Virus record (IMG/VR): IMGVR_UViG_3300023199_000204
Location: 62,001 to 126,000 of that record
Reading direction: 5' to 3' (one strand)
Length of the DNA stretch: 64,000 nucleotides
Part shown: positions 18,817-50,676 of the stretch, piece by piece
How the letters are laid out: every line of letters begins with the position of its first letter
Position numbering within the stretch: the first letter of the stretch is position 1
Notes under the pieces: generated by a model
What the model was told of the DNA's origin: nothing
The model's input: the letters and a program-made list of their open reading frames with translations, nothing else
Database searches by the model: none
Position numbers and translations under genes: made by a program

Positions 18817-18828
18817 TGGAGTTTAACA

Positions 18829-25072: not shown

Positions 25073-25073
25073 T

Positions 25074-30845: not shown

Positions 30846-30847
30846 AT

Positions 30848-33279: not shown

Positions 33280-33281
33280 TA

Positions 33282-36214: not shown

Positions 36215-37569
36215 TTAAATTAATAATATTCGATTTAGACGGAGTTCTTGTTGATGCTAGACCTCTCCACGAAAAAGCATTAAATATGGCTCTTTCCAAA
36301 GTTGATCCAAAATTTGTAATAGAAAAAGAAGAACATTTATCTACATACGATGGACTGCCCACAAGAGAAAAACTTAAAACTTTAAGTAAATTAAAAGGGC
36401 TTTCTGTTGAATTACATAATCAGGTGTGGAGAGATAAACAGTCAGCTACATTAGAGATTATAAAAACTATGACACCTGATGAAAAAATGATTTCTATTCT
36501 TTCAGAATTAAGAAAAAATTATACAGTTGTTGTTGCTTCAAATTCTATTAGAGAGACGTTAAAAATGATGCTTGTAAGAAAAGGCTTAATAGAACATATT
36601 GATTATTATTACAGTAATCAAGATGTAATAATGCCTAAACCAAATAGTGAAATGTATTTAAGGTGTATGTTAAAAGCGAATGTTAATCCAAAAGAAACTT
36701 TAATAGTTGAAGATTCACATATAGGAAGGCAAGCAGCAATTAACTCTGGTGCTCATTTATGTGCGGTGAGAGATCCAGATGATTTAACATTGGAGAAAAT
36801 CAAATCTCATCTTGATGGTGTTAATGAGGTTAAAAGACCTAAATGGCAGGGTGGTAAAATGAATGTATTAATTCCTATGGCTGGAGCGGGCAGTCGCTTT
36901 CAACAAGCAGGCTACACATTTCCCAAACCTTTAATTGAGGTGGAAGGAAAGCCTATGATACAATTAGTTATTGAAAATCTTAATATAGAAGGAAGGCATA
37001 TATTTGTTGTTCAAAAGGAACATTATGAGAAATTTAACTTAAAATATATGTTAAACTTAATTGCTCCTAATTGTGAAATTGTTCAAGTAGATGGGATAAC
37101 TGAAGGAGCTTGTTGTACGACGCTTTTGGCGAAGGAATTTATTAATAATGATGAGCCTTTATTAATCGCGAACAGCGACCAGTTTATTGAGTGGGATAGC
37201 AATGAGTTTATGTATTCTATGATTGGCGATACAGTAGATGGTGGCATCTTAACATTTAAAAATACACATAGTAAATGGAGTTATGCTAAACTAGGAGAGG
37301 ATGGATTTGTATGTGAAGTGGCGGAAAAAAAACCTATAAGTAGGAATGCGACCTGTGGCGTTTATTTTTATAATAAAGGTAGTGATTATGTTAAATACGC
37401 GGAACAGATGATTGAGGCAAATGATAGAGTAAATAATGAATTTTATGTTGCTCCTGTTTTTGAATATTTTATAAAAGATAATAAAAAAATCAAACTATAT
37501 GAGATTAAAAAGATGTGGGGTTTAGGAACTCCTGAAGATTTAGAGACCTACTTAAGGAGAAATAAATGA
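36211..37569 (+). CDS. HAD phosphatase fused to sugar-phosphate nucleotidyltransferase
   Basis: N-terminal FDLDGVLVD, ASNS, KPN, IVEDSHIG; C-terminal IPMAGAGSRF..AGY..PKPLI, ANSDQ, EVAEKK, GLGTPEDL. Confidence 0.9.
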   Translation: MIKLIIFDLDGVLVDARPLHEKALNMALSKVDPKFVIEKEEHLSTYDGLPTREKLKTLSKLKGLSVELHNQVWRDKQSATLEIIKTMTPDEKMISILSELRKNYTVVVASNSIRETLKMMLVRKGLIEHIDYYYSNQDVIMPKPNSEMYLRCMLKANVNPKETLIVEDSHIGRQAAINSGAHLCAVRDPDDLTLEKIKSHLDGVNEVKRPKWQGGKMNVLIPMAGAGSRFQQAGYTFPKPLIEVEGKPMIQLVIENLNIEGRHIFVVQKEHYEKFNLKYMLNLIAPNCEIVQVDGITEGACCTTLLAKEFINNDEPLLIANSDQFIEWDSNEFMYSMIGDTVDGGILTFKNTHSKWSYAKLGEDGFVCEVAEKKPISRNATCGVYFYNKGSDYVKYAEQMIEANDRVNNEFYVAPVFEYFIKDNKKIKLYEIKKMWGLGTPEDLETYLRRNK

Positions 37570-37949
37570 AAAATAAAATAGATGAAATGGAAAAGATTGT
37601 CGGTTTTTTAAAGTTAGATTTAAAGAACGGCAAAATAAATATAGTTTCGGATCCATATTTTGAAACGGAAGATTTTAAATCTTTTAAATCTTTTAATCTT
37701 AGTGAAAATAATATTGAATTTTCCAGAATTATTGGTAATGGTTATAAATTAAATTCTTACCCTATACCTTTATTAATGATTGTGAATAATAAAATTATTG
37801 GAACTGTTATTTGTAGTCGTTCTACGTGGAGGTGGCTTTTTTACTTAGATAATATTAAATTAAAACCAAATATTAAGCCTACCCCAGATATATATTCTAC
37901 ATTAGATAAATTTTTTAATTTACCAATAAAAGATATTATTAACATTTAA
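37566..37949 (+). CDS. Hypothetical protein
   Basis: 127-aa ORF, ATGA-coupled to the upstream gene. Confidence 0.55.
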   Translation: MKNKIDEMEKIVGFLKLDLKNGKINIVSDPYFETEDFKSFKSFNLSENNIEFSRIIGNGYKLNSYPIPLLMIVNNKIIGTVICSRSTWRWLFYLDNIKLKPNIKPTPDIYSTLDKFFNLPIKDIINI

Positions 37950-37966
37950 TTAGAGGGATAAATAAA

Positions 37967-38059
37967 ATGAATTTTACATTTGGAATTATAACTGGCGGAA
38001 ATGCTGAGGACAAAATAAAGGAAATAATAAAATCTATATATGAGGAAGTTGTTAGATGA
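37967..38059 (+). pseudogene. 30-aa stub duplicating the N-terminus of the glycosyltransferase at 39178
   Basis: MNFTFGIITGGNAEDKIKEIIKSIYEEVVR* vs MNFTFGVITAGNKTYIENIIKSIENE; own AGAGGGA RBS; its TGA overlaps the ATG of the nuclease. Confidence 0.85.
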
Positions 38060-39177
38060 CTTACATATCTGAAACAATTTTATTGTATGAGTGGGACTAT
38101 AATAAAAACATAGGATTAAATCCTAATAAAATAAAACAAGGTAGCAATAAAAAAGTATGGTGGAAATGTAATATTTGTAGTCAAAATTGGAAAGCAATTG
38201 TTAAAAACAGGTCAAAAGGGTCAAAATGCCCATACTGTATTGGAAGAAAAATTTATGAAAAAAATTGTTTATCAACAACTCATCCAGAACTAATTAAAGA
38301 ATGGGATTTTTCTAAAAACATTATATCTCCTAATGATATAAGTTTTGGAAGCCATAAAAGAGTATGGTGGAAATGTAAAAGCAAACATGAGTGGAGAGTA
38401 TCTATAAATAATAGAACAAGTCATAACTATGGATGCCCATATTGCACAAATAGAAAAGTTTGCGAAGATAATTGTTTAGAGACAAATTTTCCTAAAATAG
38501 CAAAAGAATGGAATTATAACAAAAATGGTGATCTAACTCCAAAAAATGTAATTTTCGGAAGTGGAAAAAAAGTATGGTGGAAATGTAAAAGCGGTCATGA
38601 ATGGAAGACTACTATAGTTAATAGGACAAGACTTAAAAATAATTGTCCTTATTGTTGTAATCAAAAAGTTTGTAATGATAATTGCCTATCAACAACTCAT
38701 CCAGAGTTTTTAAAAGAATGGAATTATATTAAAAATAAATTATCCCCCTATGATGTAGTTGCCGGTAGCAGTAAAAAAATTTGGTGGATATGTAAATGCG
38801 GACATGAATGGCGAGCTACTTTAAAAAATAGGACCAATAAAAATAGAAGCTGTATTAAGTGTTATAATAATAGGGTTTCTAATATTTCTCAAAAATGGTT
38901 AGATTTATTATCTGTCCCAAACAAGTTTAGAGAAATTAAAATTAATGTTAATAATAATAAATATATATTTGCTGATGCTTTTTATAACAACACTATATAT
39001 GAGTTTTACGGATGCTTTTGGCATGGATGTCCAATTTGTTTTCCAGAAGGAATTAATAAAGTTAATAAAAAGCCTTTTAAAACTTTATATTATGAAGTAG
39101 GAGAAAGAAATAATCTAATACTTTCATCTAATTATGAGTTAAAAAGCATTTGGGAATGTGATTTTAAGGAGAGATAA
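38056..39177 (+). CDS. Zinc-ribbon-repeat (x4) Vsr-like nuclease; putative homing endonuclease
   Basis: 4 KEW..KN..GS.KKVWWKC..HEW..R..CPYC units; ADAF...IYEFYGCFWHGCP. Confidence 0.8.
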   Translation: MTYISETILLYEWDYNKNIGLNPNKIKQGSNKKVWWKCNICSQNWKAIVKNRSKGSKCPYCIGRKIYEKNCLSTTHPELIKEWDFSKNIISPNDISFGSHKRVWWKCKSKHEWRVSINNRTSHNYGCPYCTNRKVCEDNCLETNFPKIAKEWNYNKNGDLTPKNVIFGSGKKVWWKCKSGHEWKTTIVNRTRLKNNCPYCCNQKVCNDNCLSTTHPEFLKEWNYIKNKLSPYDVVAGSSKKIWWICKCGHEWRATLKNRTNKNRSCIKCYNNRVSNISQKWLDLLSVPNKFREIKINVNNNKYIFADAFYNNTIYEFYGCFWHGCPICFPEGINKVNKKPFKTLYYEVGERNNLILSSNYELKSIWECDFKER

Positions 39178-39903
39178 ATGAATTTTACCTTTGGAGTTAT
39201 AACGGCGGGAAATAAAACATATATTGAAAATATTATTAAATCTATTGAAAACGAAAATATTCCTAATTATGAAATTATAGTAGTTGGCGGAAATCCAATA
39301 AAAAATATTTGTCATATACCATTTAATGAAAGTAAAAAGAAAATGTGGATTACTAAAAAGAAAAACCTAATAACTGAAAATGCTAAATATGAAAATATAG
39401 TTTATCTTCACGATTATATTAAACTAATGCCTGGTTGGTATAATGGTTTTAAAATATTTGGTAATGATTTTGATGTTTGTATGACCAAAATGGAGACATC
39501 AAGTGGAAAAAGGTATCGAGATTGGAGTTTATGTGCTTGGGCGCCTATTTTAGATTTAATAGGAGAGGAGAATAGATATGAAAGGCTTCTTCCGTATAAT
39601 GAAACCAGATTGACAAAAATACAATACATTTCTGGTGCTTACTGGGTTGCCAAAAGAGATTTTATGGTTAAGTATCCTTTAGATGAAGAGTTGGTTTGGG
39701 GGAGATCAGAAGATATTGAATGGTCTTATAGGGCACGAAAAGCCTGTAATTTTAAAATGAATGCTCACTCCTCTGTAAAGTTGTTAAAAGAAAAGGATCC
39801 GAGTTTTATCCTCGCGTCACAAAGAACAATAGATTTGTGCGTGGAGAATTTGGATTTAATTATGGAAAGAAATGAAAAGAAATATGAGGAAACTTGGAAA
39901 TGA
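39178..39903 (+). CDS. GT2-like glycosyltransferase
   Basis: NYEIIVVG, WITKKKN, VYLHDY, YPLDE.L.WG.SEDIEW. Confidence 0.7.
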   Translation: MNFTFGVITAGNKTYIENIIKSIENENIPNYEIIVVGGNPIKNICHIPFNESKKKMWITKKKNLITENAKYENIVYLHDYIKLMPGWYNGFKIFGNDFDVCMTKMETSSGKRYRDWSLCAWAPILDLIGEENRYERLLPYNETRLTKIQYISGAYWVAKRDFMVKYPLDEELVWGRSEDIEWSYRARKACNFKMNAHSSVKLLKEKDPSFILASQRTIDLCVENLDLIMERNEKKYEETWK

Positions 39904-40376
39904 AATTTATTTCGCATAGAGGAAACATAGATGGTCCAAATCCCGAAAGAGAAAATGATCCAGAATACATACAAGAAGCTCTTGATAAAGGGTTTGAAGT
40001 AGAAGTTGATGTTTGGTTTATTAATGGAGATTTTTATTTGGGACACGATTATGGTCAATATAAAATAACCAATCCAGATTTGCTATATGATAAAAGGGTA
40101 TGGTGCCACGCCAAACATATAAAAGCTTTGAAAGAAATGATTGAAGAAAATATACATTGTTTCTGGCATCAAAATGATAATTATACTTTAACATCTAATA
40201 AATATATTTGGGCATATCCTTTAAAGATATATAATCCACATACAATAGCTGTTTTGCCAGAGAACAATAATGTAATTCCAGAACATCTTGTTAAATGTGT
40301 AGGAATATGTAGTGATAATATAGCTTATTATAAAAAAGAATTTGAGTTGATAAGATTAACCAAGGAGATAAAATGA
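39900..40376 (+). CDS. Small glycerophosphodiester-phosphodiesterase-like (PLC-like) protein
   Basis: ISHRG...EN...IQEAL..GFEVEVDVW..LGHD; ATG at 39900 overlaps the upstream TGA. Confidence 0.75.
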   Translation: MKFISHRGNIDGPNPERENDPEYIQEALDKGFEVEVDVWFINGDFYLGHDYGQYKITNPDLLYDKRVWCHAKHIKALKEMIEENIHCFWHQNDNYTLTSNKYIWAYPLKIYNPHTIAVLPENNNVIPEHLVKCVGICSDNIAYYKKEFELIRLTKEIK

Positions 40377-41239
40377 AAGTATCGGTAGTTATTTCAGTAT
40401 GTGATAATAGGAAAGATATGTTTAAAAGGTCTTTGGACACCTGGTCCAAACAAACTATGGACAAAAAAGATTTTGAATTAGTTGTGGTTGATGATGCGGA
40501 AAGAAGTGATTTAAAGAAACTATGTAAAACTTACAGTAAAGAGCACAGGCTTCAAATACAATATTTAAACATCGACAATTCAAAAGCAGATGTGCCAGTA
40601 ACAACATTTTTACCTATTGTGAGCAATAATGTTGGAATGAGAATCGCAAAAGGAGATGTTGTTGTAATTACTGGTCCTGAGACACTACAGGCAGAAGATA
40701 ATTTAAAAATAGCTCACACAATGGTCGCAAGAAAAGAATGTGCCTATGGGCTTGTATATCGTTCAAATATACAGTTTGTTGATTATATTGATTCGAAATG
40801 GGATGAGCTTAAAGACAAACCTTTTGAAAATTTATTTAACATTGCTGGAGCTAAAGCTGACTGTAGAACAAGACCACCACATCCTCCAAGTTATTGGTAT
40901 TTAATGGCTGTAAAAAAAGAGTATGTAGAGAAAATTGGAGGAGTTGATGAGGCTTTTGCTAAAGGTTTCTGCGCCGAAGACGATGACTTCTCAAACAGGA
41001 TGGAAAGATCAGGAGTTATGCCTGTATTTGAACATAAAATGATTGGCATTCATCAGGATCATAGCAGAGAGGATAGGTTAGATGCTAAACATTCAATACG
41101 AAAAACACCAGAAGGGCAGAGGTTAAGAAGAAAAAACACTATGTTGTGGAAATCAAACACTGTAAAAGGCGTGGTTGAGGTTAATAAAGACCATACTTGG
41201 GGTGATACAAAAGTTATTGTAAAACACGAAACTTGGTAA
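40373..41239 (+). CDS. GT2 glycosyltransferase, paralogue of the 25074 C-terminal domain
   Basis: VSVVISV, ELVVVDD, VVVITGPETLQ, GGVDEAF, AEDDDF, IHQDH shared with 25074..26615. Confidence 0.88.
   Translation: MKVSVVISVCDNRKDMFKRSLDTWSKQTMDKKDFELVVVDDAERSDLKKLCKTYSKEHRLQIQYLNIDNSKADVPVTTFLPIVSNNVGMRIAKGDVVVITGPETLQAEDNLKIAHTMVARKECAYGLVYRSNIQFVDYIDSKWDELKDKPFENLFNIAGAKADCRTRPPHPPSYWYLMAVKKEYVEKIGGVDEAFAKGFCAEDDDFSNRMERSGVMPVFEHKMIGIHQDHSREDRLDAKHSIRKTPEGQRLRRKNTMLWKSNTVKGVVEVNKDHTWGDTKVIVKHETW
41180..41236. repeat. Direct repeat copy 1 (3' end of GT2 gene)
   Basis: 48/57 identical to 48380..48436, exactly 7200 bp downstream. Confidence 0.9.
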
Positions 41240-41251
41240 GAAATGCTAAAA

Positions 41252-41274
41252 TTTTCTACTAATATTGCTATATT
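41252..41274 (+). promoter_or_regulatory. Putative phage-specific promoter motif, copy 2 (TTTTCTACTAATATTGCTATATT)
   Basis: 19/23 identical to 20855..20877; lies in a 72-bp gap 38 nt upstream of ATG 41312. Confidence 0.5.
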
Positions 41275-41311
41275 ATTTTGATATATAAAATATTAGTAAA
41301 AGGTGGATTAA

Positions 41312-41908
41312 ATGGGAAAATTTAGTATAGAATATATGATAAATCAAGCGGTTAGTGGAACAAGTGATATTCATTCTCACTTGTTAACTTTATTTGCATT
41401 GGCCTTAAATATCAAAGCAAAAGTTATAATTGAGTTAGGCGTTAGGGGAGGCGAAAGCACTATTCCATTGTTGTTAGCAGCACAAAAAAATGGTGGAAAA
41501 TTACACTCTGTTGATATAAAAGACCACGGTATAAGTTCAGTCCCTGAAAATTTAAAAAAGTTATGGAAGTTTTATAAAAGTGACGCCATAGAGTTTTTAA
41601 AAAACTGGAAAGTAAAGGCAGATTTGGTTTTTGTTGATGATTGGCACACTTATGATCACGTTAAAAAAGAATTAGAAATAATTGAAACTTTCATAACACC
41701 TTCTAGTTTAGTAATATTACACGATTCAATGTATTACAATTATGAGCCATATTATCATATGGATTTAAACGCAACTGGGCAATGGGCAGATGGAGGCCCT
41801 TATAGGGCTCTATCTGAGCTTGATAAAAATTCTTGGGAATTCTCTACTATACCTTCTTGTCACGGCTTAACCATTTTAAGAAAAAAGCCTAATAAGAAGT
41901 TTAAATAA
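41312..41908 (+). CDS. Class I SAM methyltransferase (Methyltransf_24-like)
   Basis: IELGVRGGEST, LHSVDI, LVFVDDWHTYDHV, ILHD. Confidence 0.85.
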   Translation: MGKFSIEYMINQAVSGTSDIHSHLLTLFALALNIKAKVIIELGVRGGESTIPLLLAAQKNGGKLHSVDIKDHGISSVPENLKKLWKFYKSDAIEFLKNWKVKADLVFVDDWHTYDHVKKELEIIETFITPSSLVILHDSMYYNYEPYYHMDLNATGQWADGGPYRALSELDKNSWEFSTIPSCHGLTILRKKPNKKFK

Positions 41909-42958
41909 ATGTCTTTTAAAAATATTTTAAAAAAACATAATGATTTGCCACAGGCTCAAAAAGTATTGTTTGTTCCTGTTAATACGCGACATAACGGAAT
42001 GCCGCAGGGCTTTGTAAATAATGGATTTCAGACATATTCTATAAACATTGATAATCCTAGGTTAGATAGAAACAAATATAAAGTTGAAGGTGGCATAAAA
42101 GAAATTGGAGAACTTCTTATAGAAACTTGTAAAAATTTACAACCTAATTGGGTACATATTCCTACCTCTAAACCAGGATTAATAGAGTTAAAAGATGTAA
42201 AAGAGGCAAAAAAAGTGTGTGGCGCAATTTTTACAAGCTGGGCAGGAGATGTTAGAGAAGAACCTTTACCATTTTTTATAGAACTTAGCGAAATAATTGA
42301 TTTTACATTTATCTCTAATGTTGGCCAACTTGATTTATATAGGAAAAATGGATGTAAAAACGTAGATTATTGGCAATACGGAGTGGATGTTAATAAGGCT
42401 AAGCCACTATCTACAAAAGAAAAAGATGTTCTTAAATCTAAATATAATCACGATATAGTATTTTGTGCTAACAGCTATGATGGGTTTCCTGGTTACTATA
42501 TAAGAAAAAGTATAGTTTCAGAAGTTTATAAAAAATATGGATCTAGATTTGCTATTTATGGCAACGGGTGGGATACAATAGCGAAAAATTCTTCAAAACC
42601 TAACATAAAATATTTTGAACAAAATAATGTTTATAATTCATCTAAAATTGTTTTAAGTATTAATAATTTCAATGATATTGAAATGTATTTTTCTGGAAGA
42701 CAGTTATTGGCAATGGCCTCAGGTACATTAACATTATCTCACTATATTCCTGGTTTAGAAAGATATTTTGAAAATGGCAAAGATCTTGTTTGGTTTAAAA
42801 CCGAAGATGAATGTATGAAGTTAATAGATTATTATTTAAATAATGAAGGCGAAGCTAAAAGAATAGGATTAAATGGAAGTGCTAAGGTTCTAAAAGAACA
42901 TTCATATGAAGCTAGAATAAAAGAGTTAGGTATAAAACTAGGATTTATAAATGAGTAG
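41909..42958 (+). CDS. CgeB-like GT-B glycosyltransferase
   Basis: SKIVLSIN....YFSGR.LLAMASG...PGLERYFENGKDLVWF...HSYEARI. Confidence 0.85.
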   Translation: MSFKNILKKHNDLPQAQKVLFVPVNTRHNGMPQGFVNNGFQTYSINIDNPRLDRNKYKVEGGIKEIGELLIETCKNLQPNWVHIPTSKPGLIELKDVKEAKKVCGAIFTSWAGDVREEPLPFFIELSEIIDFTFISNVGQLDLYRKNGCKNVDYWQYGVDVNKAKPLSTKEKDVLKSKYNHDIVFCANSYDGFPGYYIRKSIVSEVYKKYGSRFAIYGNGWDTIAKNSSKPNIKYFEQNNVYNSSKIVLSINNFNDIEMYFSGRQLLAMASGTLTLSHYIPGLERYFENGKDLVWFKTEDECMKLIDYYLNNEGEAKRIGLNGSAKVLKEHSYEARIKELGIKLGFINE

Positions 42959-43712
42959 TAAATATAAACTAAATCCAAAAATTGAAGAAATTTTAACTGA
43001 TAAAAGAGTGGCTTTGGTGGGGCCATCCCCATATCTTATTGGAAGTGGAATGTCTAAAATAATAGATAGCTTTGATGTTGTATGTAGGATTAGAGATATA
43101 CTTCCAAAAAAAGATTTTAGAAATGATCTAGGAACACGAACAGATGTAATTTTTTATAACTGTGCGACTATAAGTGTGCCTCATTATAAAAAGCGTCTTA
43201 AAGAAGCCGAATCTGTTCTCAAAGATATTAAGATGATGATATGCCCTGTGGCTAAGGGGCTTGGTTCTGATGATTGGAAATCTTGGCCTGATGATTTTAT
43301 AGCACCAGTGGTTAAAAACTTTGCTAATGTTAATAAATATAACATTCCGTTTCATTGGATAGGTATTCCAAACTATAGAATATTATATAATGAGGTTGGT
43401 GTGGAGCCAAACACTGGAACTTTAGCTATTAAGGTGCTTTTGAAATATAAAGTAAAAGAGCTTTTTATAACAGGATTTAGTTTCTATGCTGAAGGATCTA
43501 CAGTTTCAAAAGTATACTATCCAGGATATTTGTTAAATGGGTTTGAGCCAAATCCAAAGACCTGGAGCCCTCATAAAGGTCATAATCAAGATATACAAAA
43601 AAAGCATTTTATAAACAATATTTTACCAAGCACTTCAACAAAAGTGATAGTTGATTCTTATTTAAACAACCTATTAAGTCTAAATCACAAAGAAGTAATA
43701 AAAATAAAATGA
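42951..43712 (+). CDS. GT29 (eukaryote-type) sialyltransferase-like protein
   Basis: L-motif-like RVALVGPSPYLIGSGMSKIIDSFDVVCRI...DLGTRTD; S-motif-like PNTGTLAIKVLL....ELFITGFSFY; VS-like GHNQ; next to NeuA/NeuB. Confidence 0.7.
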   Translation: MSSKYKLNPKIEEILTDKRVALVGPSPYLIGSGMSKIIDSFDVVCRIRDILPKKDFRNDLGTRTDVIFYNCATISVPHYKKRLKEAESVLKDIKMMICPVAKGLGSDDWKSWPDDFIAPVVKNFANVNKYNIPFHWIGIPNYRILYNEVGVEPNTGTLAIKVLLKYKVKELFITGFSFYAEGSTVSKVYYPGYLLNGFEPNPKTWSPHKGHNQDIQKKHFINNILPSTSTKVIVDSYLNNLLSLNHKEVIKIK

Positions 43713-44398
43713 AGTTATTAGCTATAATCCCTGCTCGTGGGGCAAGTAAAAGTATAAAGAAAAAAAATATAATAGATTTAAATGGAAACCCATTATTATC
43801 ATATACAATACGTTTTTGTCAAAAGTCCAAAGTAATTAAAAATTGTTATGTATCTACAGAAGATGAAGAAATTAAGGCGGTAGCTCAAAAATATAAAGCA
43901 GCCGTAATAGATAGACCACATAAATATTCTATGGATAATTCTACAGATTATGGCTTTTTAAGCCATTTTTTTAGTATAATTCAATGTGATGAAGTTGCTC
44001 TTATGAGACCAACGACTCCAATTAGAAATTTGGAGTTTGTAGAAAAGGCAGTTAAAAAATATTTTGATATTAAAGACGATATAACTGGGTTTAGAAGTGT
44101 TAATGAAATTAATGAAACTCCTTATAAAGTATTTAAAATAAATAAAAGTGGTATATGCGAAGGATTTTTTGATAATTTTAATAACATAAGTGATTATTCA
44201 AATTTACCCAGACAAAGTTTTCCAAAAACATATAAGCCCAACGGACATATAGATATAGTTAAAAAATTAACTCTAGAGTCTGGTAGTATTTTTGGTAATA
44301 GAATTTATGGTTTCATAGGTAGCAGAATTACAGATATAGATAGTATTGAAGACTTAGAATTCGCAAAATATGAAATAAGTCTAAAGGAGAATAAATGA
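43709..44398 (+). CDS. neuA: CMP-nonulosonate (acylneuraminate) cytidylyltransferase
   Basis: IIPARGASKSIKKKNI..LNGNPLLSY, VSTEDEEI, RPTTP, DIDSIEDL. Confidence 0.93.
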   Translation: MKLLAIIPARGASKSIKKKNIIDLNGNPLLSYTIRFCQKSKVIKNCYVSTEDEEIKAVAQKYKAAVIDRPHKYSMDNSTDYGFLSHFFSIIQCDEVALMRPTTPIRNLEFVEKAVKKYFDIKDDITGFRSVNEINETPYKVFKINKSGICEGFFDNFNNISDYSNLPRQSFPKTYKPNGHIDIVKKLTLESGSIFGNRIYGFIGSRITDIDSIEDLEFAKYEISLKENK

Positions 44399-45231
44399 GT
44401 GTTTTTATTATAGGAGAGATAGGTATTAATCATAATGGATGTATAGATACAGCTTTAGATTTAATAAAAAAGGCTTCAGTCGCTGGATGCGATGCGGTTA
44501 AGTTTCAAAAAAGAACGGTAGATGTAGTGTACTCTAAAGAAGATCTGGATCGGCCTAGAGAGTCGCCTTGGGGAACAACAAATCGGGAACAAAAATACGG
44601 GTTAGAGTTCGGAGAGGAAGAGTATAATAAAATTGATAGTTTTTGTAAAAAGATGAAAATAGAATGGTTTGCTTCCTCTTGGGATGTAAAATCTCAATTA
44701 TTTTTACAAAAATATTCTTTAAACTATAATAAAATTGCTTCTGCTATGTTGACAAATAGAGAGTTGTTGAAAATCGTAGCAGCAGAGAAGAAACATACAT
44801 TTATTTCTACTGGAATGTCTAGTATGGAGCAAATAGATAAGGCTCAGCAAATATTTTTGAAAAATGGATGCCCATATGAATTAATGCATACCACTAGTGT
44901 TTATCCAATGGATCCAGAGGACGCAAATCTAAAAATGATAGAGACTTTACAAAAGAAATTTAATGTGCCAGTAGGTTATTCTGGACACGAGGTTGGTATT
45001 GCTATTAGTTGTGCTGCTGCTGCTCTTGGAGCAACCTCTATTGAGAGGCACATAACATTAGATAGATCTATGTATGGTTCTGATCAGAGTGCATCTTTAG
45101 AAATAGCAGGTCTAGAAAAGCTAGTTAAGTACATAAGAGCAATTGAAAAAGCTATGGGTGACGGAGTTAAAAAAACTACAGATAAAGAGCTTGAAGTTGC
45201 TAAAAAGTTACGGCGGGTAAATACTTTATAA
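44395..45231 (+). CDS. neuB: N-acetylneuraminate synthase family (PEP-dependent), lacking the C-terminal SAF domain
   Basis: IIGEIGINHNG, DAVKFQ, KIASA, ISTGMS, MHTTSVYP, VGYSGHE, IERHITLD, DQSASL; ends at 278 aa. Confidence 0.92.
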   Translation: MSVFIIGEIGINHNGCIDTALDLIKKASVAGCDAVKFQKRTVDVVYSKEDLDRPRESPWGTTNREQKYGLEFGEEEYNKIDSFCKKMKIEWFASSWDVKSQLFLQKYSLNYNKIASAMLTNRELLKIVAAEKKHTFISTGMSSMEQIDKAQQIFLKNGCPYELMHTTSVYPMDPEDANLKMIETLQKKFNVPVGYSGHEVGIAISCAAAALGATSIERHITLDRSMYGSDQSASLEIAGLEKLVKYIRAIEKAMGDGVKKTTDKELEVAKKLRRVNTL

Positions 45232-45668
45232 TGGCATCTATAAGACATATAGGAATTACCGTTAGTAATTTATCAAAATCTTTAAATTTTTATGAAAGCT
45301 ACTTTGGTTTTAAAATTCAAAGAAAAATGGAAGAATCTGGTGAAGTTCTTGATAATTTTTCCGCATTAAAAAATGTAGAAGTAATAACAGTAAAGCTTAG
45401 TGATAATAAGGAGCAGCTTTTAGAACTTCTTTGTTATAAATCTCACCCTAATAATAAAGTTGAGTTAAATTTGAAAAGACAAATTTGTTATGTAGGTTGC
45501 TCACATTTTGCTTTAACTGTAGATGATTTAGATGAGATATATAATAAAATGTGCGAAAACGGGATTATATTTAATTACCCTCCTCAAATTTCATCAGATA
45601 ATAAGGTAAAGATTGCTTTTTGTAAGGATCCAGATGGAGTTTTAATAGAATTGGTTGAGGAACTATGA
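45231..45668 (+). CDS. VOC/glyoxalase-fold protein
   Basis: IRHIGITVSNLSKSLNFY, SHFALTVDDL, DPDGVLIELVE. Confidence 0.9.
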   Translation: MASIRHIGITVSNLSKSLNFYESYFGFKIQRKMEESGEVLDNFSALKNVEVITVKLSDNKEQLLELLCYKSHPNNKVELNLKRQICYVGCSHFALTVDDLDEIYNKMCENGIIFNYPPQISSDNKVKIAFCKDPDGVLIELVEEL

Positions 45669-46351
45669 GTATATTAAAAAATAAAAGGGTATTAATAACT
45701 GGAGCATCTAGTGGCCTGGGATATGAATTAGCAAAGGAATTATGTCATAAAAACTGTGATTTGTTTTTAACTGGAAGGAGTTGTTTAAAAAATATTCCAA
45801 AAGACATATATAGTTTATATTTCCCTTGCGATTTAACAGATTCTACTAAACTAGCTGAATTAATCAAAGAATGTAAAAAGAAGCTAGGTGGAATAGATAT
45901 CCTAATTAATTCTGCCGGAACATTCTCTATTTCAGAAAATGAAAATCTAGAAGATTTAGAATATAATCTAGAGCTAAATGTTATTGTTCCATTTAAACTA
46001 TACAAGGCGTTTATAGATGATATGATTGAAAATAAATGGGGAAGAATAGTTAATATAGGGTCATCTTCTTGCTATAAAGGATCAAAAGATACTTTAACAT
46101 ATTGTACATCGAAACACGCCTTGTTAGGTTTTACTAGATCTTTATATGATAGACATAGAAATGATGATATTAAGGTTTTTTGTATTTCTCCAGGATCTAT
46201 GAAAACTAAAATGGCACAAATTGACCACAGGCAAGACTTTAGTACTTTTTTAGATCCTAAAGAAGTTGCTAAATACATATCTTTTGTTTTGGAGTTTAAT
46301 TCAAACTTAATTTCTGAAGAATTAAGATTAAATAGGATGGTAGTTAAATAA
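45665..46351 (+). CDS. SDR oxidoreductase
   Basis: TGASSGLG, DILINSAG, YCTSK. Confidence 0.9.
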   Translation: MSILKNKRVLITGASSGLGYELAKELCHKNCDLFLTGRSCLKNIPKDIYSLYFPCDLTDSTKLAELIKECKKKLGGIDILINSAGTFSISENENLEDLEYNLELNVIVPFKLYKAFIDDMIENKWGRIVNIGSSSCYKGSKDTLTYCTSKHALLGFTRSLYDRHRNDDIKVFCISPGSMKTKMAQIDHRQDFSTFLDPKEVAKYISFVLEFNSNLISEELRLNRMVVK

Positions 46352-46352
46352 T

Positions 46353-47042
46353 ATGACAAAATACACTGAAGTAATATATCCTGAAGACAAAGGTAATACT
46401 TATCCAGATAAATATTTTAAACATATATGTGAAAATTATTTACTTAAAGATTTATATAACAAAAAGATTTTAGATATAGGGTGTGGAAAAGGCACAGCTA
46501 TGAATTATTTTTCAAAATATGGTCTTAATTCATTTGGAATTGATTGCCGAGATGAGGGTTTAGATAATTTTAAACTATGTAATATAGAAAATGAATCAAT
46601 TCCTTACCCAGACAATACTTTTGATATAGTATATAGTAAATCAGTAATAGAGCACGTTATTAATTCTGATAATTTTATTGATCAATCAATAAGAGTTTTA
46701 AAGCCTGGTGGTCTTTTCATATGTTTAACCCCTGACTGGGGATCACAATATAAATATTTTTGGGACGATTACACTCACGTAAAACCATTTACCAGGAAAT
46801 CATTACAAAATTTACTTTTAATTAAGAATTGCGTTGATGTTGAATGTAACTATTTTTATCAACTTCCTTTTTTATGGAAATATCCTAGGCTGGTGTTTAT
46901 ATCAAAAGTCATATCATTTTTATTTCCAGATGATTTGAAATGGAAAACAAAAGCACAAAGAAATACCGAAGATAGAAAGTTAATTAGATTTTCCAAAGAA
47001 AAAATGCTATTGGCTAGGGGATTTAAAGCAAATTATGAATAA
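46353..47042 (+). CDS. Class I SAM methyltransferase
   Basis: ILDIGCGKG, PYPDNTFD, VIEHV, RVLKPGG. Confidence 0.9.
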   Translation: MTKYTEVIYPEDKGNTYPDKYFKHICENYLLKDLYNKKILDIGCGKGTAMNYFSKYGLNSFGIDCRDEGLDNFKLCNIENESIPYPDNTFDIVYSKSVIEHVINSDNFIDQSIRVLKPGGLFICLTPDWGSQYKYFWDDYTHVKPFTRKSLQNLLLIKNCVDVECNYFYQLPFLWKYPRLVFISKVISFLFPDDLKWKTKAQRNTEDRKLIRFSKEKMLLARGFKANYE

Positions 47043-47757
47043 CTTATTTTCTGTAAAAGACAAGGTCGTAATTATTACTGGCGGTGCGAGAGGAAACGGT
47101 TTAGCATTAACAGAAGGTTTTAGGGCTCACGGAGCTATAGTTTACTCCTGTGATATTTTAAATAAAAATAAAAAAGATCCTAATCATTTTATTTTTAATA
47201 TAAAAGACGTATATAGTCTAGCAAAATTTGTTGATCAAGTATATGAAAATGAAAAACACATAGATGTATTAATTAATAATGCTGGCGTTACAAATAGCGG
47301 ATATACCGATAGTGCTTGGGATGAAACTTATCAAATAAACTTAAAATCACTTTTTAATATTACTAGATTGTGCTTAAAATATATGGTTCAAAAAACCCGA
47401 GGCTCTATAATAAATATTACTAGTTTAAACGCAGAGGTTTCTTTTCCAAATAATCCTTCCTATATAGCTACAAAGGGAGCTATTAAGCAGCTTACCAAAG
47501 CAATTGCCAGAGATTATGGCAAATATAATATACGGGCAAATAATTTAGGTCCAGGCTATATCATTACAGATATGACGGCAACCAGTTATAAAAACGAGGA
47601 AATTAGGACTAATAGGGCTAATAGAACAATGCTTGGAAGATGGGGTTGTTCAGAAGATTTGGTTGGTCCGGCAATATTCTTAGCTTCTAGGGCCTCTTCT
47701 TATATTACTGGAGAAGACATATATGTAGATGGCGGATGGCTAGCGAAGGGAGAATAA
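47035..47757 (+). CDS. SDR oxidoreductase
   Basis: TGGARGNG, DVLINNAG, YIATK, NNLGPG, VDGGW. Confidence 0.9.
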   Translation: MNNLFSVKDKVVIITGGARGNGLALTEGFRAHGAIVYSCDILNKNKKDPNHFIFNIKDVYSLAKFVDQVYENEKHIDVLINNAGVTNSGYTDSAWDETYQINLKSLFNITRLCLKYMVQKTRGSIINITSLNAEVSFPNNPSYIATKGAIKQLTKAIARDYGKYNIRANNLGPGYIITDMTATSYKNEEIRTNRANRTMLGRWGCSEDLVGPAIFLASRASSYITGEDIYVDGGWLAKGE

Positions 47758-48374
47758 ATTTGAAAGATTTTAAAAAATATATAAAAGCTCATATTAAAAA
47801 TAGTTTGTCAATACTAAATAAGGTTAAAAAAGAATGTAATAAAGATATATGTAAAGCTATAGATATAATCCTTAATTCATTATTAGCGGGGAACAAATTA
47901 ATGTTATGTGGAAATGGTGGAAGTGCCGCTGATTGTCAACATATGGCTGCTGAATTCATAAGCTCATTCTCTAAAAATATAAATAGAAAGGGTATTCCTG
48001 CAATAGCATTAACAACAGATACTTCAATTTTAACGGCATATTCTAATGATTTTGGATATGATGGTGTTTTTAAAAGACAAGTTGAAACTTTAGGAAAACC
48101 AGGTGATGTTTTGTTAGGAATAAGTACCAGTGGAAACTCAAAAAATATCATTCTAGCTTTGGAGGCTGCGTCTAACATTGGGATTAAAAGAATATCACTT
48201 ACTGGAAAAGATGGAGGCTTGGTTAAAAATGTTTCAGAAGTATGTATAAAAGTCCCTAGTTCGGACACTATGTATATACAAGAATGTCATTTAACAATAG
48301 AACATATAATATGTGCTATGGTTGAAGAGAAAATAGTAAATAATAAAAATTTTCTTATCAAGGGAGTTATATAA
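47736..48374 (+). CDS. gmhA: GmhA-like SIS-domain sugar-phosphate isomerase
   Basis: CGNGGSAADCQHMAAE, TAYSND, STSGNSKN, IQECH; alternative TTG start at 47760. Confidence 0.88.
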   Translation: MASEGRINLKDFKKYIKAHIKNSLSILNKVKKECNKDICKAIDIILNSLLAGNKLMLCGNGGSAADCQHMAAEFISSFSKNINRKGIPAIALTTDTSILTAYSNDFGYDGVFKRQVETLGKPGDVLLGISTSGNSKNIILALEAASNIGIKRISLTGKDGGLVKNVSEVCIKVPSSDTMYIQECHLTIEHIICAMVEEKIVNNKNFLIKGVI

Positions 48375-48442
48375 TGAAAGTTAATAAAGACTATACTTGG
48401 AGAGATCTTAAGGTTATTGTAAAACACGAAATATGGAGTTAA
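48374..48442 (+). pseudogene. 22-aa stub repeating the C-terminus of GT2 40373..41239 (direct repeat copy 2)
   Basis: MKVNKDYTWRDLKVIVKHEIWS* vs ...VNKDHTWGDTKVIVKHETW*; TAATG-coupled to the upstream gene. Confidence 0.88.
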
Positions 48443-48445
48443 ATA

Positions 48446-49675
48446 ATGCACGAGAAAAAATGTTCTAAATGTAAAAATATATTAGATTTTTCTAATTTTA
48501 GTAAAAGTACATCTCGTGGGGGTGATAAATTTAGTCTTAGCTATTATTGTAAATCTTGTGTAAGTGAATATAATAAAGAAAAAAATGTTTATAAAAACTA
48601 TTATATAAAAAATAAAAAGGCATGCTTAGAAAAGTGTAAAAGATGGAGAGAAAAAAATATAGAGTATAGGAGAGAATACGATAGAGAATATAGTAAAAAA
48701 AATATAAAGAAAAAGCTAGCATATAAAAAAAAAAAGTATAGAGAAGATGAAACATATCGGCTCAAAGAAAATCTACGCTCTTCCCTGCAGCGTGCTTTTA
48801 AAACTCAAAATACACAAAAAATGTTTTTATCTAAAACTTATGGAATAAATTATGATGAAATAATTAATTATCTTGGACCAAAACCAGAGAGTAATTATGA
48901 AATAGACCATATATTACCTTGTTCATCTTTTAATCATAATAACCCTATGGAAATATGGATGTGTTGGAATAAAGACAATTTTCAATGGCTTCCATTAACA
49001 GAAAATCGTAGGAAAAATAACTACTATAATGATGAATATTATTTAAAATATTATAAAGAAAAAGCAAATATATATGTAAAAAATAATTTTGAGAACTTAA
49101 CTTCTAAATTACATTTAGGATGCAGCAATGTATATTTAGAAAATTATCTAAATATAGACATCAATCCAACATATTATTCTGGTTTTGTAGAGCAAAATTT
49201 TATTGAAAATGTTAAAACTAATTTTAATAATTATTATAGATATGATTTTTGTAAAGGTCCAGAATATTCAGTGGTAGATGTTGGGGCAGACATTAGCAAA
49301 CATATTCCCATTGATAGTAATACTTGTGATGAAGTTGTGATGCTTCACGTTTTGGAACATTTTCCTAAATATGTTGTAGGAAATGTTTTAGATGAAATAA
49401 ACAGAGTTTTAAAATATGGTGGGGTATTTGTTGTAGGAGTTCCAGATATTATTGAAACTTCAAAATTACTTTTAAAAGCGTCTACTCCCGAGGAAGAAAA
49501 CTGGGCATTAAGGCTAATTGATGGTTCCCAACGTAATGAATGGAGTCATCATTTTATGAGTTTCAGTAAAAAGAGTTTAATTAGATTATTAGAAGAACAC
49601 GGGTTTGGAGAGTTTGAAGATTTACCTAATATAAACTTTTATCCTGCTGTTCATTTGAAAGCAAGGAAGTTATAA
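48446..49675 (+). CDS. In-frame fusion of HNH homing endonuclease and class I methyltransferase
   Basis: N-terminal CSKC..CKSC and YEIDHILP..NFQWL..EN; C-terminal KLHLGCS..NIDI, HVLEH, RVLKYGG; no stop between the domains. Confidence 0.85.
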   Translation: MHEKKCSKCKNILDFSNFSKSTSRGGDKFSLSYYCKSCVSEYNKEKNVYKNYYIKNKKACLEKCKRWREKNIEYRREYDREYSKKNIKKKLAYKKKKYREDETYRLKENLRSSLQRAFKTQNTQKMFLSKTYGINYDEIINYLGPKPESNYEIDHILPCSSFNHNNPMEIWMCWNKDNFQWLPLTENRRKNNYYNDEYYLKYYKEKANIYVKNNFENLTSKLHLGCSNVYLENYLNIDINPTYYSGFVEQNFIENVKTNFNNYYRYDFCKGPEYSVVDVGADISKHIPIDSNTCDEVVMLHVLEHFPKYVVGNVLDEINRVLKYGGVFVVGVPDIIETSKLLLKASTPEEENWALRLIDGSQRNEWSHHFMSFSKKSLIRLLEEHGFGEFEDLPNINFYPAVHLKARKL

Positions 49676-50673: not shown

Positions 50674-50676
50674 TTA

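What the first reader, a model, noticed from the sequence alone, without database searches (positions are those of the whole stretch)
42951..45231. Complete synthase-activator-transferase sialylation triad with a eukaryote-type GT29
Seen: adjacent GT29-like gene (recognisable L-, S- and VS-like sialylmotifs), CMP-transferase NeuA and PEP-dependent synthase NeuB. Established: GT29 is the animal/plant sialyltransferase family, and bacterial sialyltransferases usually belong to other families (GT38/42/52/80). Inference: the phage makes, activates and transfers a sialic-acid-like sugar itself, possibly to shield the virion.
Basis: partly seen in the sequence, partly recalled or inferred. Interest (0 to 1): 0.62.

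Follow-up and report, generated by a model that had tools for sequence, protein, structure and literature searches.

The report
Jumbo-phage sialic-acid-like sugar transfer module
An uncultured 316-kb phage carries three coupled genes that should make, activate and transfer a sialic-acid-like sugar; the transferase belongs to a soluble, largely viral branch of the mostly eukaryotic GT29 family, for which I found no published description.

Summary
Three translationally coupled + strand ORFs lie exactly at 42951-45231.

- **GT29-like transferase (253 aa).** It scores 32.1 bits against PF00777 (cut-off 23). The AF2 model has pLDDT 93. Its four best solved-structure matches are the four vertebrate GT29 types (Z 13-14), ahead of GT42 Cst-I (Z 10.5).
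- **CMP-sugar synthetase (229 aa).**
- **NeuB-family synthase (278 aa)**, lacking the usual SAF domain.

The genes lie in a ~32-kb island of soluble sugar enzymes in a tailed jumbo phage. The three genes lie together, usually in this order, in phages only 37-46% identical, and are under purifying selection.

"Eukaryote-type" is overstated:
- The protein has no membrane anchor and no L-motif cysteine, and it carries H-x4-Q instead of H-x4-E.
- Its family has at least 272 relatives in IMG/VR, on phage and giant-virus contigs.
- The family is rare in bacteria (4 of 401 Bacteroidota genomes) and absent from deposited phage genomes, apart from one weak match.

"Complete" applies only to the last three steps. 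No NeuC-type epimerase is present in the record. The sugar's identity and its acceptor (virion or host surface) remain open.

I rate this a new variant of a known kind, of moderate to high interest.

The parts
42951..43712 (+). Soluble GT29-like glycosyltransferase (253 aa, P0001); predicted CMP-ulosonic-acid transferase with candidate catalytic His211
   Evidence: PF00777 32.1 bits, above cut-off 23. Family profile against PDB: ST6Gal1 E 2.5e-9, Cst-II 3e-6. AF2 pLDDT 93. GT29 folds Z 13.1-14.0. H211 invariant. No TM segment. pN 0.156 against pS 0.68 relative to L089.
43709..44398 (+). CMP-nonulosonic-acid synthetase (NeuA/PseF-like cytidylyltransferase, 229 aa)
   Evidence: PF02348 63.4 bits. 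NCBIfam PseF 99 bits, below cut-off 205.7. Best solved relative 6ifd, a CMP-Neu5Ac synthetase, E 5e-26 over the full length.
44395..45231 (+). NeuB-family PEP-dependent ulosonic acid synthase (278 aa), TIM-barrel only, no SAF domain
   Evidence: PF03102 234.6 bits, profile 1-241 of 241. NeuB_NnaB 243 bits and PseI 180 bits, both below cut-offs. Best solved relative 6ncs (290 aa) E 2e-39. Only NeuB copy in the record. SAF-less clusters in Uroviricota and Actinomycetota.
45231..47757 (+). Four genes that travel with the triad: VOC/glyoxalase-fold (45231-45668), SDR (45665-46351), SAM methyltransferase (46353-47042), SDR adh_short_C2 (47035-47757). Probably tailoring or precursor enzymes of the same sugar.
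   Evidence: Pfam. Same set after NeuB in L089, L008, L018 and L021. Precedent for an adh_short_C2 enzyme epimerising a nonulosonic acid: EpaB/AciE (PMC12053666).
47736..48374 (+). GmhA-like phosphoheptose isomerase (SIS), last gene of the block shared with L089; role in this sugar or in a separate heptose route is unresolved
   Evidence: NF010546 203.5 bits and TIGR00441 199.4 bits, just below cut-offs. Conserved in L089.
41909..42958 (+). GT4-like glycosyltransferase (Glyco_trans_1_2) overlapping the GT29-like start by 8 nt; candidate maker of the acceptor glycan
   Evidence: PF13524 99.2 bits. Conserved upstream of the GT29-like gene in L089.
22811..54493 (+). About 32-kb glycan-assembly island holding the triad. 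It has about 10 glycosyltransferase genes (a double GT4, several GT2, GT47-like, PF03407/GT77-like, GT4-like, GT29-like). It also has a dTDP-hexose route (RmlA/RmlB-like plus aminotransferase), GMD plus fcl-like, a beta-PGM-like/nucleotidyltransferase fusion and methyltransferases. All are predicted soluble.
   Evidence: Pfam and NCBIfam. No convincing hydrophobic segment in any island protein; four single 19-residue windows barely pass the threshold. Flanked by baseplate/tail genes at 5463-20184 and replication genes at 57955-63445.

Best explanation
The three genes are the core of a conserved phage module that caps a phage-built glycan with a negatively charged 3-deoxy-2-ulosonic (most likely nine-carbon, nonulosonic) acid.

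Proposed steps:
1. The SAF-less NeuB-type synthase condenses PEP with a manno-configured aldose. That aldose comes from the host or from enzymes not yet recognised.
2. The cytidylyltransferase converts the acid to its CMP-sugar.
3. The soluble GT29-like enzyme binds the CMP-sugar through its L/S-motif Rossmann core. It transfers the sugar with inversion, with His211 as general base, onto a glycan assembled by the other roughly nine glycosyltransferases of the island.
4. The neighbouring VOC, two SDRs and a methyltransferase probably tailor the sugar (epimerisation, methylation).

Everything happens in the infected cell's cytoplasm. The most likely acceptors are virion proteins, as in glycosylated mycobacteriophages and giant viruses. 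The result would be a charged coat on the particle.

Shown here: family and fold of the three proteins, their coupling, conservation and selection, and their solubility.
Inferred: the donor sugar, the catalytic residue and the acceptor.

My odds: module makes, activates and transfers a CMP-ulosonic acid, about 0.8. The sugar is a nonulosonic acid rather than something else, about 0.7. The acceptor is the virion, about 0.4. The overall confidence given (0.6) is for the biochemical module as described, with the acceptor left as the weakest step.
For: - Family and fold.
- Translational coupling (4-nt overlaps).
- The triad is found in L002/L003, L005/L006, L007, L008, L011, L012, L016, L018, L021 and L089 at 37-74% identity. 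The genes are contiguous and in the window's order in L005-L008, L011 and L089. In L012, L016, L018 and L021 the order differs or other genes intervene.
- In the family tree the window lies in a 13-row clade (SH-aLRT 89). Twelve of these loci hold a NeuB-like gene. The 13th (L017) is cut off 2 bases after the GT29-like match.
- Family-wide link to a cytidylyltransferase. Of 70 distinct viral GT29-like genes, 37 have a CTP_transf_3 gene within 6 kb, 20 have it immediately downstream, and 4 have it in the same ORF (L058 confirmed by Pfam).
- Purifying selection on all nine genes of the block (pN 0.13-0.24, pS 0.68-0.90).
- H211 is invariant and aligns with the VS-motif His of a bacterial GT29.
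- No island protein has a convincing membrane-spanning segment, and no flippase, polymerase or polyprenyl-phosphate transferase was recognised.
- The island abuts the baseplate/tail-fibre genes.
- Precedents: virion glycosylation in mycobacteriophages (Freeman 2023, as cited in PMC12619734) and giant viruses (PMC9614988).
Against: - No biochemical data.
- Sequence similarity to GT29 is significant only over the L motif and the start of S.
- The VS-motif Glu is Gln, and the L-motif Cys is absent.
- No equivalog-level match identifies the sugar.
- No phage-encoded source of the aldose substrate was identified.
- GT29 members can use other CMP-sugars, for example the putative plant CMP-Kdo transferase (PMC11288761).
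- Nothing in the sequence identifies the acceptor.
- The one experimentally documented case of phage-encoded nonulosonic-acid enzymes acts on the host capsule (PMC12053666).
- The record is an uncultured, linear contig with no terminal repeat and a CheckV completeness estimate of 18%, so genes elsewhere may be missing.
Confidence: 0.6

Rival explanations
1. Host-surface remodelling. The module and the island's soluble glycosyltransferases act at the cytoplasmic face on the host's own lipid-linked LPS, capsule, S-layer or flagellin glycans. The host's flippases export the product. This changes the cell surface during infection (superinfection exclusion, or avoidance of progeny loss on debris) rather than coating the virion.
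For: Prophage-encoded EpaA (cytidylyltransferase-like) and EpaB (adh_short_C2 SDR) remodel a capsule nonulosonic acid in Acinetobacter (PMC12053666). The window has the same two enzyme types next to NeuB. Serotype-converting phage glycosyltransferases are classical (noted in PMC12619734). Cytoplasmic-face enzymes of LPS pathways are also soluble or peripheral, so one search does not exclude this reading.
Against: No integrase or lysogeny genes were seen in the window. A roughly 32-kb island with about 10 glycosyltransferases and several complete nucleotide-sugar routes is far more than known serotype-conversion cassettes. No initiating transferase, flippase or ligase was recognised. The island sits beside virion genes.
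Confidence: 0.3
2. Same architecture but a different chemistry. The GT29-like enzyme transfers something other than a sialic-acid-like nonulosonic acid. Candidates are an eight-carbon Kdo-type acid, or a longer acid made from a heptose phosphate supplied by the adjacent GmhA-like isomerase. On this reading 'sialylation' is a misnomer.
For: A plant GT29 is a putative CMP-Kdo transferase (PMC11288761). The sister clade of phage GT29-like genes pairs with a cytidylyltransferase-cupin fusion and has no NeuB within 6 kb. The window and L089 carry a GmhA-like gene in the block where relatives carry a NeuC-like epimerase. The SAF domain is missing; from my own knowledge it helps bind the N-acetyl group in N. 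meningitidis NeuB.
Against: The synthase is a full-length NeuB-family barrel (234.6 bits). To my knowledge all characterised members of that family make nine-carbon acids. The cytidylyltransferase is closer to PseF/NeuA than to KdsB (99 against 46 bits). GmhA may simply serve a separate NDP-heptose route with the beta-PGM-like/nucleotidyltransferase fusion.
Confidence: 0.15
3. The GT29-like protein is not a glycosyltransferase. It is another enzyme of the same fold superfamily (MptE-like pyrophosphokinase, Maf-like protein) or an inactive relic.
For: MptE-like HPPK and Maf score Z about 10. The canonical VS Glu and the L-motif Cys are missing. Sequence similarity is limited to the N-terminal half.
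Against: GT29 folds rank clearly first (Z 13-14 against 10). All 21 members hit PF00777 and none hits MptE-like. There is strong purifying selection, invariant H211, D235, G156 and G175, and linkage or fusion to a cytidylyltransferase.
Confidence: 0.04
4. The island glycosylates phage DNA (hypermodified bases) rather than proteins or lipids.
For: Virus-encoded glycosyltransferases that hypermodify DNA are known (Pyle 2024, as cited in PMC12619734).
Against: To my knowledge no such system uses CMP-ulosonic acids or about 10 glycosyltransferases with several nucleotide-sugar routes. I did not look for base-hydroxymethylating enzymes.
Confidence: 0.02

Closest known systems
Eukaryotic GT29 sialyltransferases (ST3Gal, ST6Gal, ST6GalNAc, ST8Sia; Pfam PF00777)
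   Same: Best HMM and best fold match. L-motif and start of S-motif conserved. A histidine lies at the VS position. Predicted CMP-sugar donor.
   Different: No N-terminal membrane anchor or stem, so cytoplasmic rather than Golgi-luminal. The L-motif Cys is Val. H-x4-Q instead of H-x4-E. Only 253 aa. 14-20% identity in structural alignments.
Bacterial GT29-like sequences (Petit et al. 2018, PMC5811610) and the Bacteroidota MAG protein in L087
   Same: Prokaryote-world GT29 relatives. L087 also sits beside NeuA- and NeuB-like genes. It shares 38% identity over the L motif and the invariant His.
   Different: L087 keeps H-x4-E, and Pfam recognises its S-VS region. The family is rare in cells (4 of 401 Bacteroidota) but abundant on viral contigs. 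The 2018 survey does not mention viruses or phages.
GT42 sialyltransferases Cst-I/Cst-II of Campylobacter
   Same: Same GT-A variant fold, similar size, soluble, with the N-terminal G-x-G-P-S type nucleotide loop. The family profile aligns to Cst-II over positions 15-211 (E 3e-6).
   Different: Weaker by sequence and fold than GT29 (Z 10.5 against 14). No member of the family hits a GT42 model at E<=1.
Viral GT29 genes: poxvirus and herpesvirus sialyltransferases, and automatically annotated GT29 proteins of ChoanoV1, Fadolivirus and 'uncultured Caudovirales phage' in UniProt/BFVD
   Same: Same fold. BFVD hits have E 1e-9 to 1e-5 and include a phage entry already labelled 'Glycosyl transferase family 29'. 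GVMAG contigs carry relatives.
   Different: The animal-virus enzymes are captured host Golgi enzymes. The phage entries carry only automatic labels. I found no paper analysing them or their link to NeuA/NeuB.
Bacterial nonulosonic-acid (nab/neu/pse/leg) clusters
   Same: NeuB-type synthase plus CMP-synthetase plus transferase in one operon, with SDR and methyltransferase tailoring genes.
   Different: No hydrolysing 2-epimerase and no recognisable dehydratase, aminotransferase, acetyltransferase and hydrolase set for Pse/Leg. The synthase lacks SAF. The transferase is GT29-like rather than GT38, GT42, GT52, GT80 or Maf.
Phage and giant-virus virion glycosylation (mycobacteriophages; Mimivirus/CroV glycan clusters, PMC9614988)
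   Same: A large virus-encoded, cytoplasmic glycan-building island next to structural genes. CroV also has a NeuA-like cytidylyltransferase fused to a methyltransferase in a predicted ulosonic-acid (Kdo) route.
   Different: No nonulosonic acid or GT29-like transferase has been reported for those systems in the papers read.

Membership tests
CAZy GT29 / Pfam PF00777 | HMM match above the curated threshold | tested here: met
   32.1 bits against cut-off 23, E 1e-7, but profile 55-133 of 272 only. 21 of 21 family members match.
CAZy GT29 / Pfam PF00777 | Sialylmotif L (nucleotide-binding start of the Rossmann core) | tested here: met
   Family profile aligns to the L motif of ST6Gal1, ST3Gal1, ST8SiaIII and ST6GalNAc2, E 2.5e-9 to 4.6e-5.
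CAZy GT29 / Pfam PF00777 | Sialylmotif S | tested here: inconclusive
   Only its start (PNTG against PSSG) is aligned by HMMER. The C-terminal half alone finds no solved glycosyltransferase. Structural alignments span it.
CAZy GT29 / Pfam PF00777 | Motif VS, H-x4-E, with catalytic His | tested here: inconclusive
   H211 is invariant and aligns with the H of H-x4-E in bacterial L087, whose S-VS region Pfam recognises. The window has H-x4-Q. No residue-level superposition on a solved GT29 was possible.
CAZy GT29 / Pfam PF00777 | GT-A variant 2 sialyltransferase fold | tested here: met
   Z 14.0, 13.9, 13.6 and 13.1 to the four vertebrate GT29 types, with 184-205 residues aligned. Foldseek E 6e-8 to 1e-5.
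CAZy GT29 / Pfam PF00777 | Conserved L-S disulfide cysteines and type II membrane topology (eukaryotic members) | tested here: not met
   Val20 aligns to the L-motif Cys. No hydrophobic segment (max KD19 1.12).
CAZy GT29 / Pfam PF00777 | Inverting transfer from a CMP-ulosonic acid | not testable with these tools
   Only contextual support: adjacency or fusion to CTP_transf_3.
CAZy GT42 (Cst-I/II) | Family HMM match; best fold match | tested here: not met
   No GT42 model hit at E<=1 for any of 21 members. Cst-II E 3e-6 and Z 10.5, both weaker than GT29.
NeuB family nonulosonic acid synthase (PF03102; TIGR03569/TIGR03586) | Full TIM-barrel NeuB domain | tested here: met
   234.6 bits, profile 1-241 of 241.
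NeuB family nonulosonic acid synthase (PF03102; TIGR03569/TIGR03586) | C-terminal SAF/antifreeze-like domain and equivalog-level score (assigns Neu/Leg or Pse) | tested here: not met
   The protein ends at 278 aa with no SAF hit. NeuB_NnaB 243 bits against 399.65; PseI 180 bits against 340.25.
CMP-nonulosonic acid synthetase (PF02348; TIGR03584 PseF) | Cytidylyltransferase domain; equivalog-level score | tested here: inconclusive
   Pfam met (63.4 bits). PseF 99.4 bits against 205.7, so not met. Full-length alignment to 6ifd, E 5e-26.
Self-sufficient nonulosonic acid pathway (nab/neu/leg/pse cluster) | Hydrolysing UDP/GDP-HexNAc 2-epimerase (NeuC/LegG, PF02350) or a PseB/C/H/G set that supplies the aldose | tested here: not met
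   No PF02350 in the 316-kb record, while 11 of 14 control genomes ring. The neighbouring dehydratase and nucleotidyltransferase score as RmlB/RmlA-like. The record may be incomplete.
Phage virion glycosylation system | Glycan covalently attached to capsid or tail proteins | not testable with these tools
   Only indirect support: soluble enzymes and an island next to the baseplate/tail genes.

The most novel reading that the evidence does not exclude
Uncultured aquatic jumbo phages, and some giant viruses, share a large soluble clade of GT29-like transferases that I did not find described. These enzymes are hard-wired, sometimes fused, to CMP-sugar synthetases. In this lineage they would cap the virion's own cytoplasmically built glycan with a new, tailored (epimerised or methylated) nonulosonic acid made by a SAF-less NeuB. 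This would make 'sialylated' phage particles a widespread feature of aquatic viromes. It would also make viruses a major reservoir, and a possible conduit, in the evolution of the GT29 family.
Probability: 0.3. Interest if true: 0.8.

Novelty: new variant of a known kind. Interest (0 to 1): 0.6.

Why it matters
- **Evolution of GT29.** GT29 is the family behind animal sialylation. Its deep origin is debated, with a proteobacterial source proposed in 2018. A populous, mostly viral, anchor-less branch linked to NeuA and NeuB changes the sampling on which that debate rests.
- **Enzymology.** These are small soluble enzymes of about 250 aa that could be practical glyco-engineering catalysts.
- **Phage biology.** A charged, sialic-acid-like cap on virions (or on infected cells) would affect adsorption, aggregation, grazing and recognition. 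It would extend virion glycosylation from mycobacteriophages and giant viruses to aquatic jumbo phages.
- **Testability.** The questions can be addressed with three recombinant proteins.

Tried and rejected
- DNA similarity of 42000-46000 to GenBank phages: none.
- tblastn of P0001 and of an L036-type relative against 50,697 phage records: none. An L079-type relative gave one weak hit to an uncultured 484-kb phage. So no cultured relative is available for comparison.
- PHROGs has no family for P0001.
- A profile of the C-terminal half alone against PDB sequences gave only a chance ribosomal hit. S/VS similarity cannot be claimed from sequence.
- The promoter/terminator scan equals the shuffled expectation and was not used.
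- PF07068 (gp23) search of the record: nothing, but the control also rang nowhere, so it is uninformative.
I therefore have no habitat or expression data, and read laying was not used.
I replaced it with a profile search of 401 Bacteroidota genomes.
The direction of transfer is left open.
- The large representative-protein search was not run, because of cost and because the claim does not rest on absence of relatives.
- Considered and set aside: GT42 membership; Maf/MptE-like identity; DNA glycosylation; a cellular contaminant contig. The last is argued against by the baseplate and replication genes, the near single-strand gene order, the 32 tRNAs, and recurrence of the block on many viral contigs.

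Full report
**Setting.** The window is bases 62001-126000 of a 316,473-bp linear IMG/VR virus record. The record has 32% GC and 32 tRNA genes. Of its 230 ORFs of 150 aa or more, 214 are on one strand. Within the window, PHROGs finds baseplate wedge proteins at 5463-9153. It also finds a DNA helicase, a DnaC-like loader and a DnaB-like helicase at 57955-63445. This is therefore a tailed jumbo phage, not a cellular or giant-virus fragment.

**The island.** Between the tail and replication modules lies a block of sugar genes about 32 kb long (22811-54493). It contains:
- a double GT4, several GT2, a PF03407 (GT77-like) protein and a GT47 exostosin-like protein;
- an RmlA-like and RmlB-like pair with a DegT aminotransferase;
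- a beta-phosphoglucomutase-like HAD fused to a nucleotidyltransferase;
- GMD plus a fucose-synthase-like reductase, a GmhA-like isomerase, SDRs and methyltransferases.

No protein in this block has a convincing hydrophobic segment. No flippase, polymerase or polyprenyl-phosphate transferase was recognised.

**The observation.** They overlap by four bases at each junction. The first overlaps the upstream GT4-like gene by eight bases.
- The first protein (P0001, 253 aa) scores 32.1 bits on PF00777, above the 23-bit cut-off. The match covers only profile positions 55-133, the sialylmotif L region.
- The second matches CTP_transf_3. It is nearest to PseF (99 bits, below the cut-off) and to the solved CMP-Neu5Ac synthetase 6ifd (E 5e-26, full length).
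- The third is a full-length NeuB barrel (234.6 bits). It stops at 278 aa without the SAF domain. It stays below the NeuB/NnaB and PseI equivalog thresholds. Its nearest solved relative is the 290-aa 6ncs.

**Is the first protein really GT29-like?** A word-index search found 20 relatives of 213-393 aa. All are metagenomic and nearly all carry PF00777. All 21 members hit PF00777 and no other glycosyltransferase family at E<=1.

A profile of the family finds ST6Gal1 (E 2.5e-9), ST3Gal1, ST8SiaIII and ST6GalNAc2 among solved structures. It finds the GT42 enzyme Cst-II more weakly (3e-6), although over more of its length.

An AlphaFold2 model built on the family alignment is confident (pLDDT 93, pTM 0.92).
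- Foldseek ranks the vertebrate GT29 structures first (E 6e-8 to 1e-5), then Cst-II and Cst-I.
- An exhaustive structural comparison gives Z 14.0, 13.9, 13.6 and 13.1 for the four GT29 types.
- Cst-I scores 10.5, an MptE-like kinase 10.3 and a Maf glycosyltransferase 10.2.

The motif claim needs trimming:
- L is solid.
- Only the start of S (PNTG against PSSG) is aligned by sequence.
- The C-terminal half alone finds no glycosyltransferase by sequence.
- His211 is invariant across distant members. It aligns with the His of an H-x4-E motif in a bacterial homologue (L087), in which Pfam does recognise the S-VS region.
- The phage protein reads H-x4-Q.
- The L-motif cysteine of animal enzymes is Val20 here, and there is no membrane anchor.

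It is thus a soluble, cysteine-less GT29-like enzyme, not a Golgi-type one.

**Is the triad a unit?** Yes, on four lines of evidence.
- **Conserved linkage.** Relatives only 37-46% identical keep a NeuA-like and a NeuB-like gene within a few kb of the GT29-like gene: L002/L003 (a 204-kb contig with PhoH and a PD-(D/E)XK nuclease), L005/L006, L007, L008, L011, L012, L016, L018 and L021. The three genes are contiguous and in the window's order in L005-L008 and L011. In L012, L016, L018 and L021 the order differs or other genes intervene.
- **A nine-gene block.** A 74%-identical relative (L089) keeps a nine-gene block: GT4-like, GT29-like, NeuA, NeuB, VOC, SDR, methyltransferase, SDR, SIS. Between the window and L089, synonymous sites are saturated (pS 0.68-0.90) while pN is 0.13-0.24. 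All nine genes are therefore under purifying selection. The VOC, SDR and methyltransferase genes also lie near NeuB in L008, L018 and L021.
- **Phylogeny.** In a tree of 73 family members the window falls in a 13-row clade (SH-aLRT 89). Twelve of these loci hold a NeuB-like gene. The 13th (L017) is cut off 2 bases after the GT29-like match. The neighbouring 17-row clade always has a cytidylyltransferase, there fused to a cupin, but no NeuB within 6 kb.
- **Link to a cytidylyltransferase across the family.** Among 70 distinct viral GT29-like genes, 37 have a CTP_transf_3 gene within 6 kb. In 20 it is immediately downstream. In four it is in the same ORF, and Pfam confirms the GT29 plus CTP_transf_3 fusion in L058.

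This linkage is the best available evidence that the family uses CMP-activated sugars.

**What 'complete' and 'sialic' can mean.**
- The 316-kb record has a single NeuB and no NeuC/LegG-type 2-epimerase. Relatives L002 and L005 do carry one.
- The dehydratase and nucleotidyltransferase upstream score as RmlB-like (344 bits against 365) and RmlA-like. The aminotransferase is generic. They look like a dTDP-aminodeoxyhexose route, not a Pse/Leg route.
- The aldose condensed by NeuB is therefore supplied by the host or by unrecognised genes. The record may also be incomplete.
- The sugar cannot be named. The synthase scores higher on the Neu/Leg model than on the Pse model. The cytidylyltransferase scores best on PseF. 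The SAF domain is absent. Conserved SDRs and a methyltransferase suggest tailoring, as with the adh_short_C2 enzymes EpaB/AciE that epimerise C8 of nonulosonic acids (PMC12053666).
- GT29 is not restricted to sialic acids, since a plant member is a putative CMP-Kdo transferase (PMC11288761).

**Distribution and 'eukaryote-type'.**
- A scan of IMG/VR found 272 loci encoding relatives. They include contigs binned as giant-virus MAGs at 28-31% identity.
- The nearest ESM Atlas clusters (71, 147 and 510 members) are mostly Uroviricota.
- BFVD holds similar folds from ChoanoV1, Fadolivirus, Homavirus, animal pox- and herpesviruses, and an 'uncultured Caudovirales phage' entry already auto-labelled GT29.
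- Among cells, a pattern scan of GTDB species representatives found one Bacteroidota MAG. That MAG also has NeuA- and NeuB-like neighbours. A profile search found matches in 4 of 401 Bacteroidota genomes.
- Deposited phage genomes contain essentially none.
- Bacterial GT29-like sequences were reported in 2018 and proposed as the source of the eukaryotic family. That paper does not mention viruses (PMC5811610; PMC10225777).
- In my unrooted tree the giant-virus sequences nest among phage sequences.

Nothing here shows a eukaryotic origin. I could not build a rooted tree with eukaryotic members.

**Mechanism and acceptor.** The most economical reading has three steps. A cytoplasmic NeuB-type condensation is followed by CMP activation. 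The GT29-like enzyme then performs an inverting transfer onto a glycan built by the island's other glycosyltransferases. The translationally coupled upstream GT4-like enzyme is the best candidate maker of the immediate acceptor.

Three things favour protein, most likely virion, glycosylation: all enzymes are soluble, no export machinery was recognised, and the island abuts the tail genes. Mycobacteriophages (cited in PMC12619734) and giant viruses (PMC9614988) are precedents. This remains inference. The only experimentally documented phage-encoded nonulosonic-acid enzymes remodel the host capsule (PMC12053666). I therefore keep host-surface modification as a strong rival (about 0.3).

**Novelty.** Searches of the held literature found no description of phage GT29-like transferases or of their linkage to NeuA/NeuB. 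A recent paper on aquatic jumbo 'moraphages' of Bacteroidota notes core glycosyltransferases but no sialic-acid genes. All the components are known kinds: GT29, NeuA, NeuB and virus-encoded glycan islands. Databases already auto-label some phage proteins as GT29. New here are:
- the soluble, largely viral clade;
- its hard-wiring to the activation enzyme;
- its placement in a jumbo-phage glycan island;
- a SAF-less synthase with a conserved tailoring set.

I rate it a new variant of a known kind, interest 0.6.

**Limits.**
- There was no residue-level superposition on solved GT29 structures.
- The host is unknown.
- The record's completeness is uncertain.
- No alternative genetic code was needed.

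Noticed in passing
window 30848-32182 and 38056-39177; also 21912-22814 and 48446-49675: Two multi-repeat DUF4379 treble-clef zinc-finger proteins (5 and 4 repeats) sit inside the glycan island. A LAGLIDADG+HNH homing endonuclease lies at its upstream edge. A methyltransferase carries an N-terminal HNH_4 motif. The island is peppered with mobile-endonuclease-like genes.
   Followed up: no
window 29928-30845 and 26615-27445: Further glycosyltransferase families best known from eukaryotes occur in the same island: a GT47 exostosin-like protein (43.6 bits) and PF03407 Nucleotid_trans (GT77-like, 28.5 bits).
   Followed up: no
window 36211-37569 and 47736-48374: A beta-phosphoglucomutase-like HAD domain is fused to a sugar-1-phosphate nucleotidyltransferase. 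A near-threshold GmhA phosphoheptose isomerase lies further along. Together they could form a kinase-free NDP-heptose route. This is an untested idea.
   Followed up: partly
L028:3442-6696 (IMGVR_UViG_3300027668_001981): A single 1085-aa ORF combines GT2, GT11, GT10 (the latter two are fucosyltransferase families) and a GT29-like domain. It is followed by a cytidylyltransferase gene. This looks like a one-protein assembly line for a fucosylated, ulosonic-acid-capped glycan.
   Followed up: partly
L090:4015-15128 and L091 (TARA ocean contigs with gp32 and DnaB): A phage contig carrying gp32 and DnaB genes carries GT4, GT11, GT6, GT29-like, CTP_transf_3, methyltransferase and sulfotransferase genes in a row. 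This protein is found on at least 24 contigs.
   Followed up: no
L058:2906-4327, L060, L072, L074: GT29-like and CTP_transf_3 domains lie in one open reading frame. Pfam confirms both domains in L058. These loci form their own well-supported clade.
   Followed up: partly
L036:6693-7853, L037:6712-7836: In the sister clade, the gene after the GT29-like gene is a cytidylyltransferase fused to a cupin (mannose-6-phosphate-isomerase-like) domain. No NeuB lies within 6 kb.
   Followed up: partly
window 1777-3795: A 672-aa protein beside the baseplate genes has about five hydrophobic segments at residues 64-194 and no PHROG match.
   Followed up: no
G000:C1:163249-315306 (outside the window): 32 tRNA genes, most of them clustered at 261-302 kb of the record. 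No terminal repeat was found at the contig ends.
   Followed up: no
L002:11391-13794: The 204-kb relative carries two NeuB-family genes (248 and 274 aa) separated by an SDR. Further downstream it has a NeuC-like Epimerase_2, which the window's phage lacks.
   Followed up: partly
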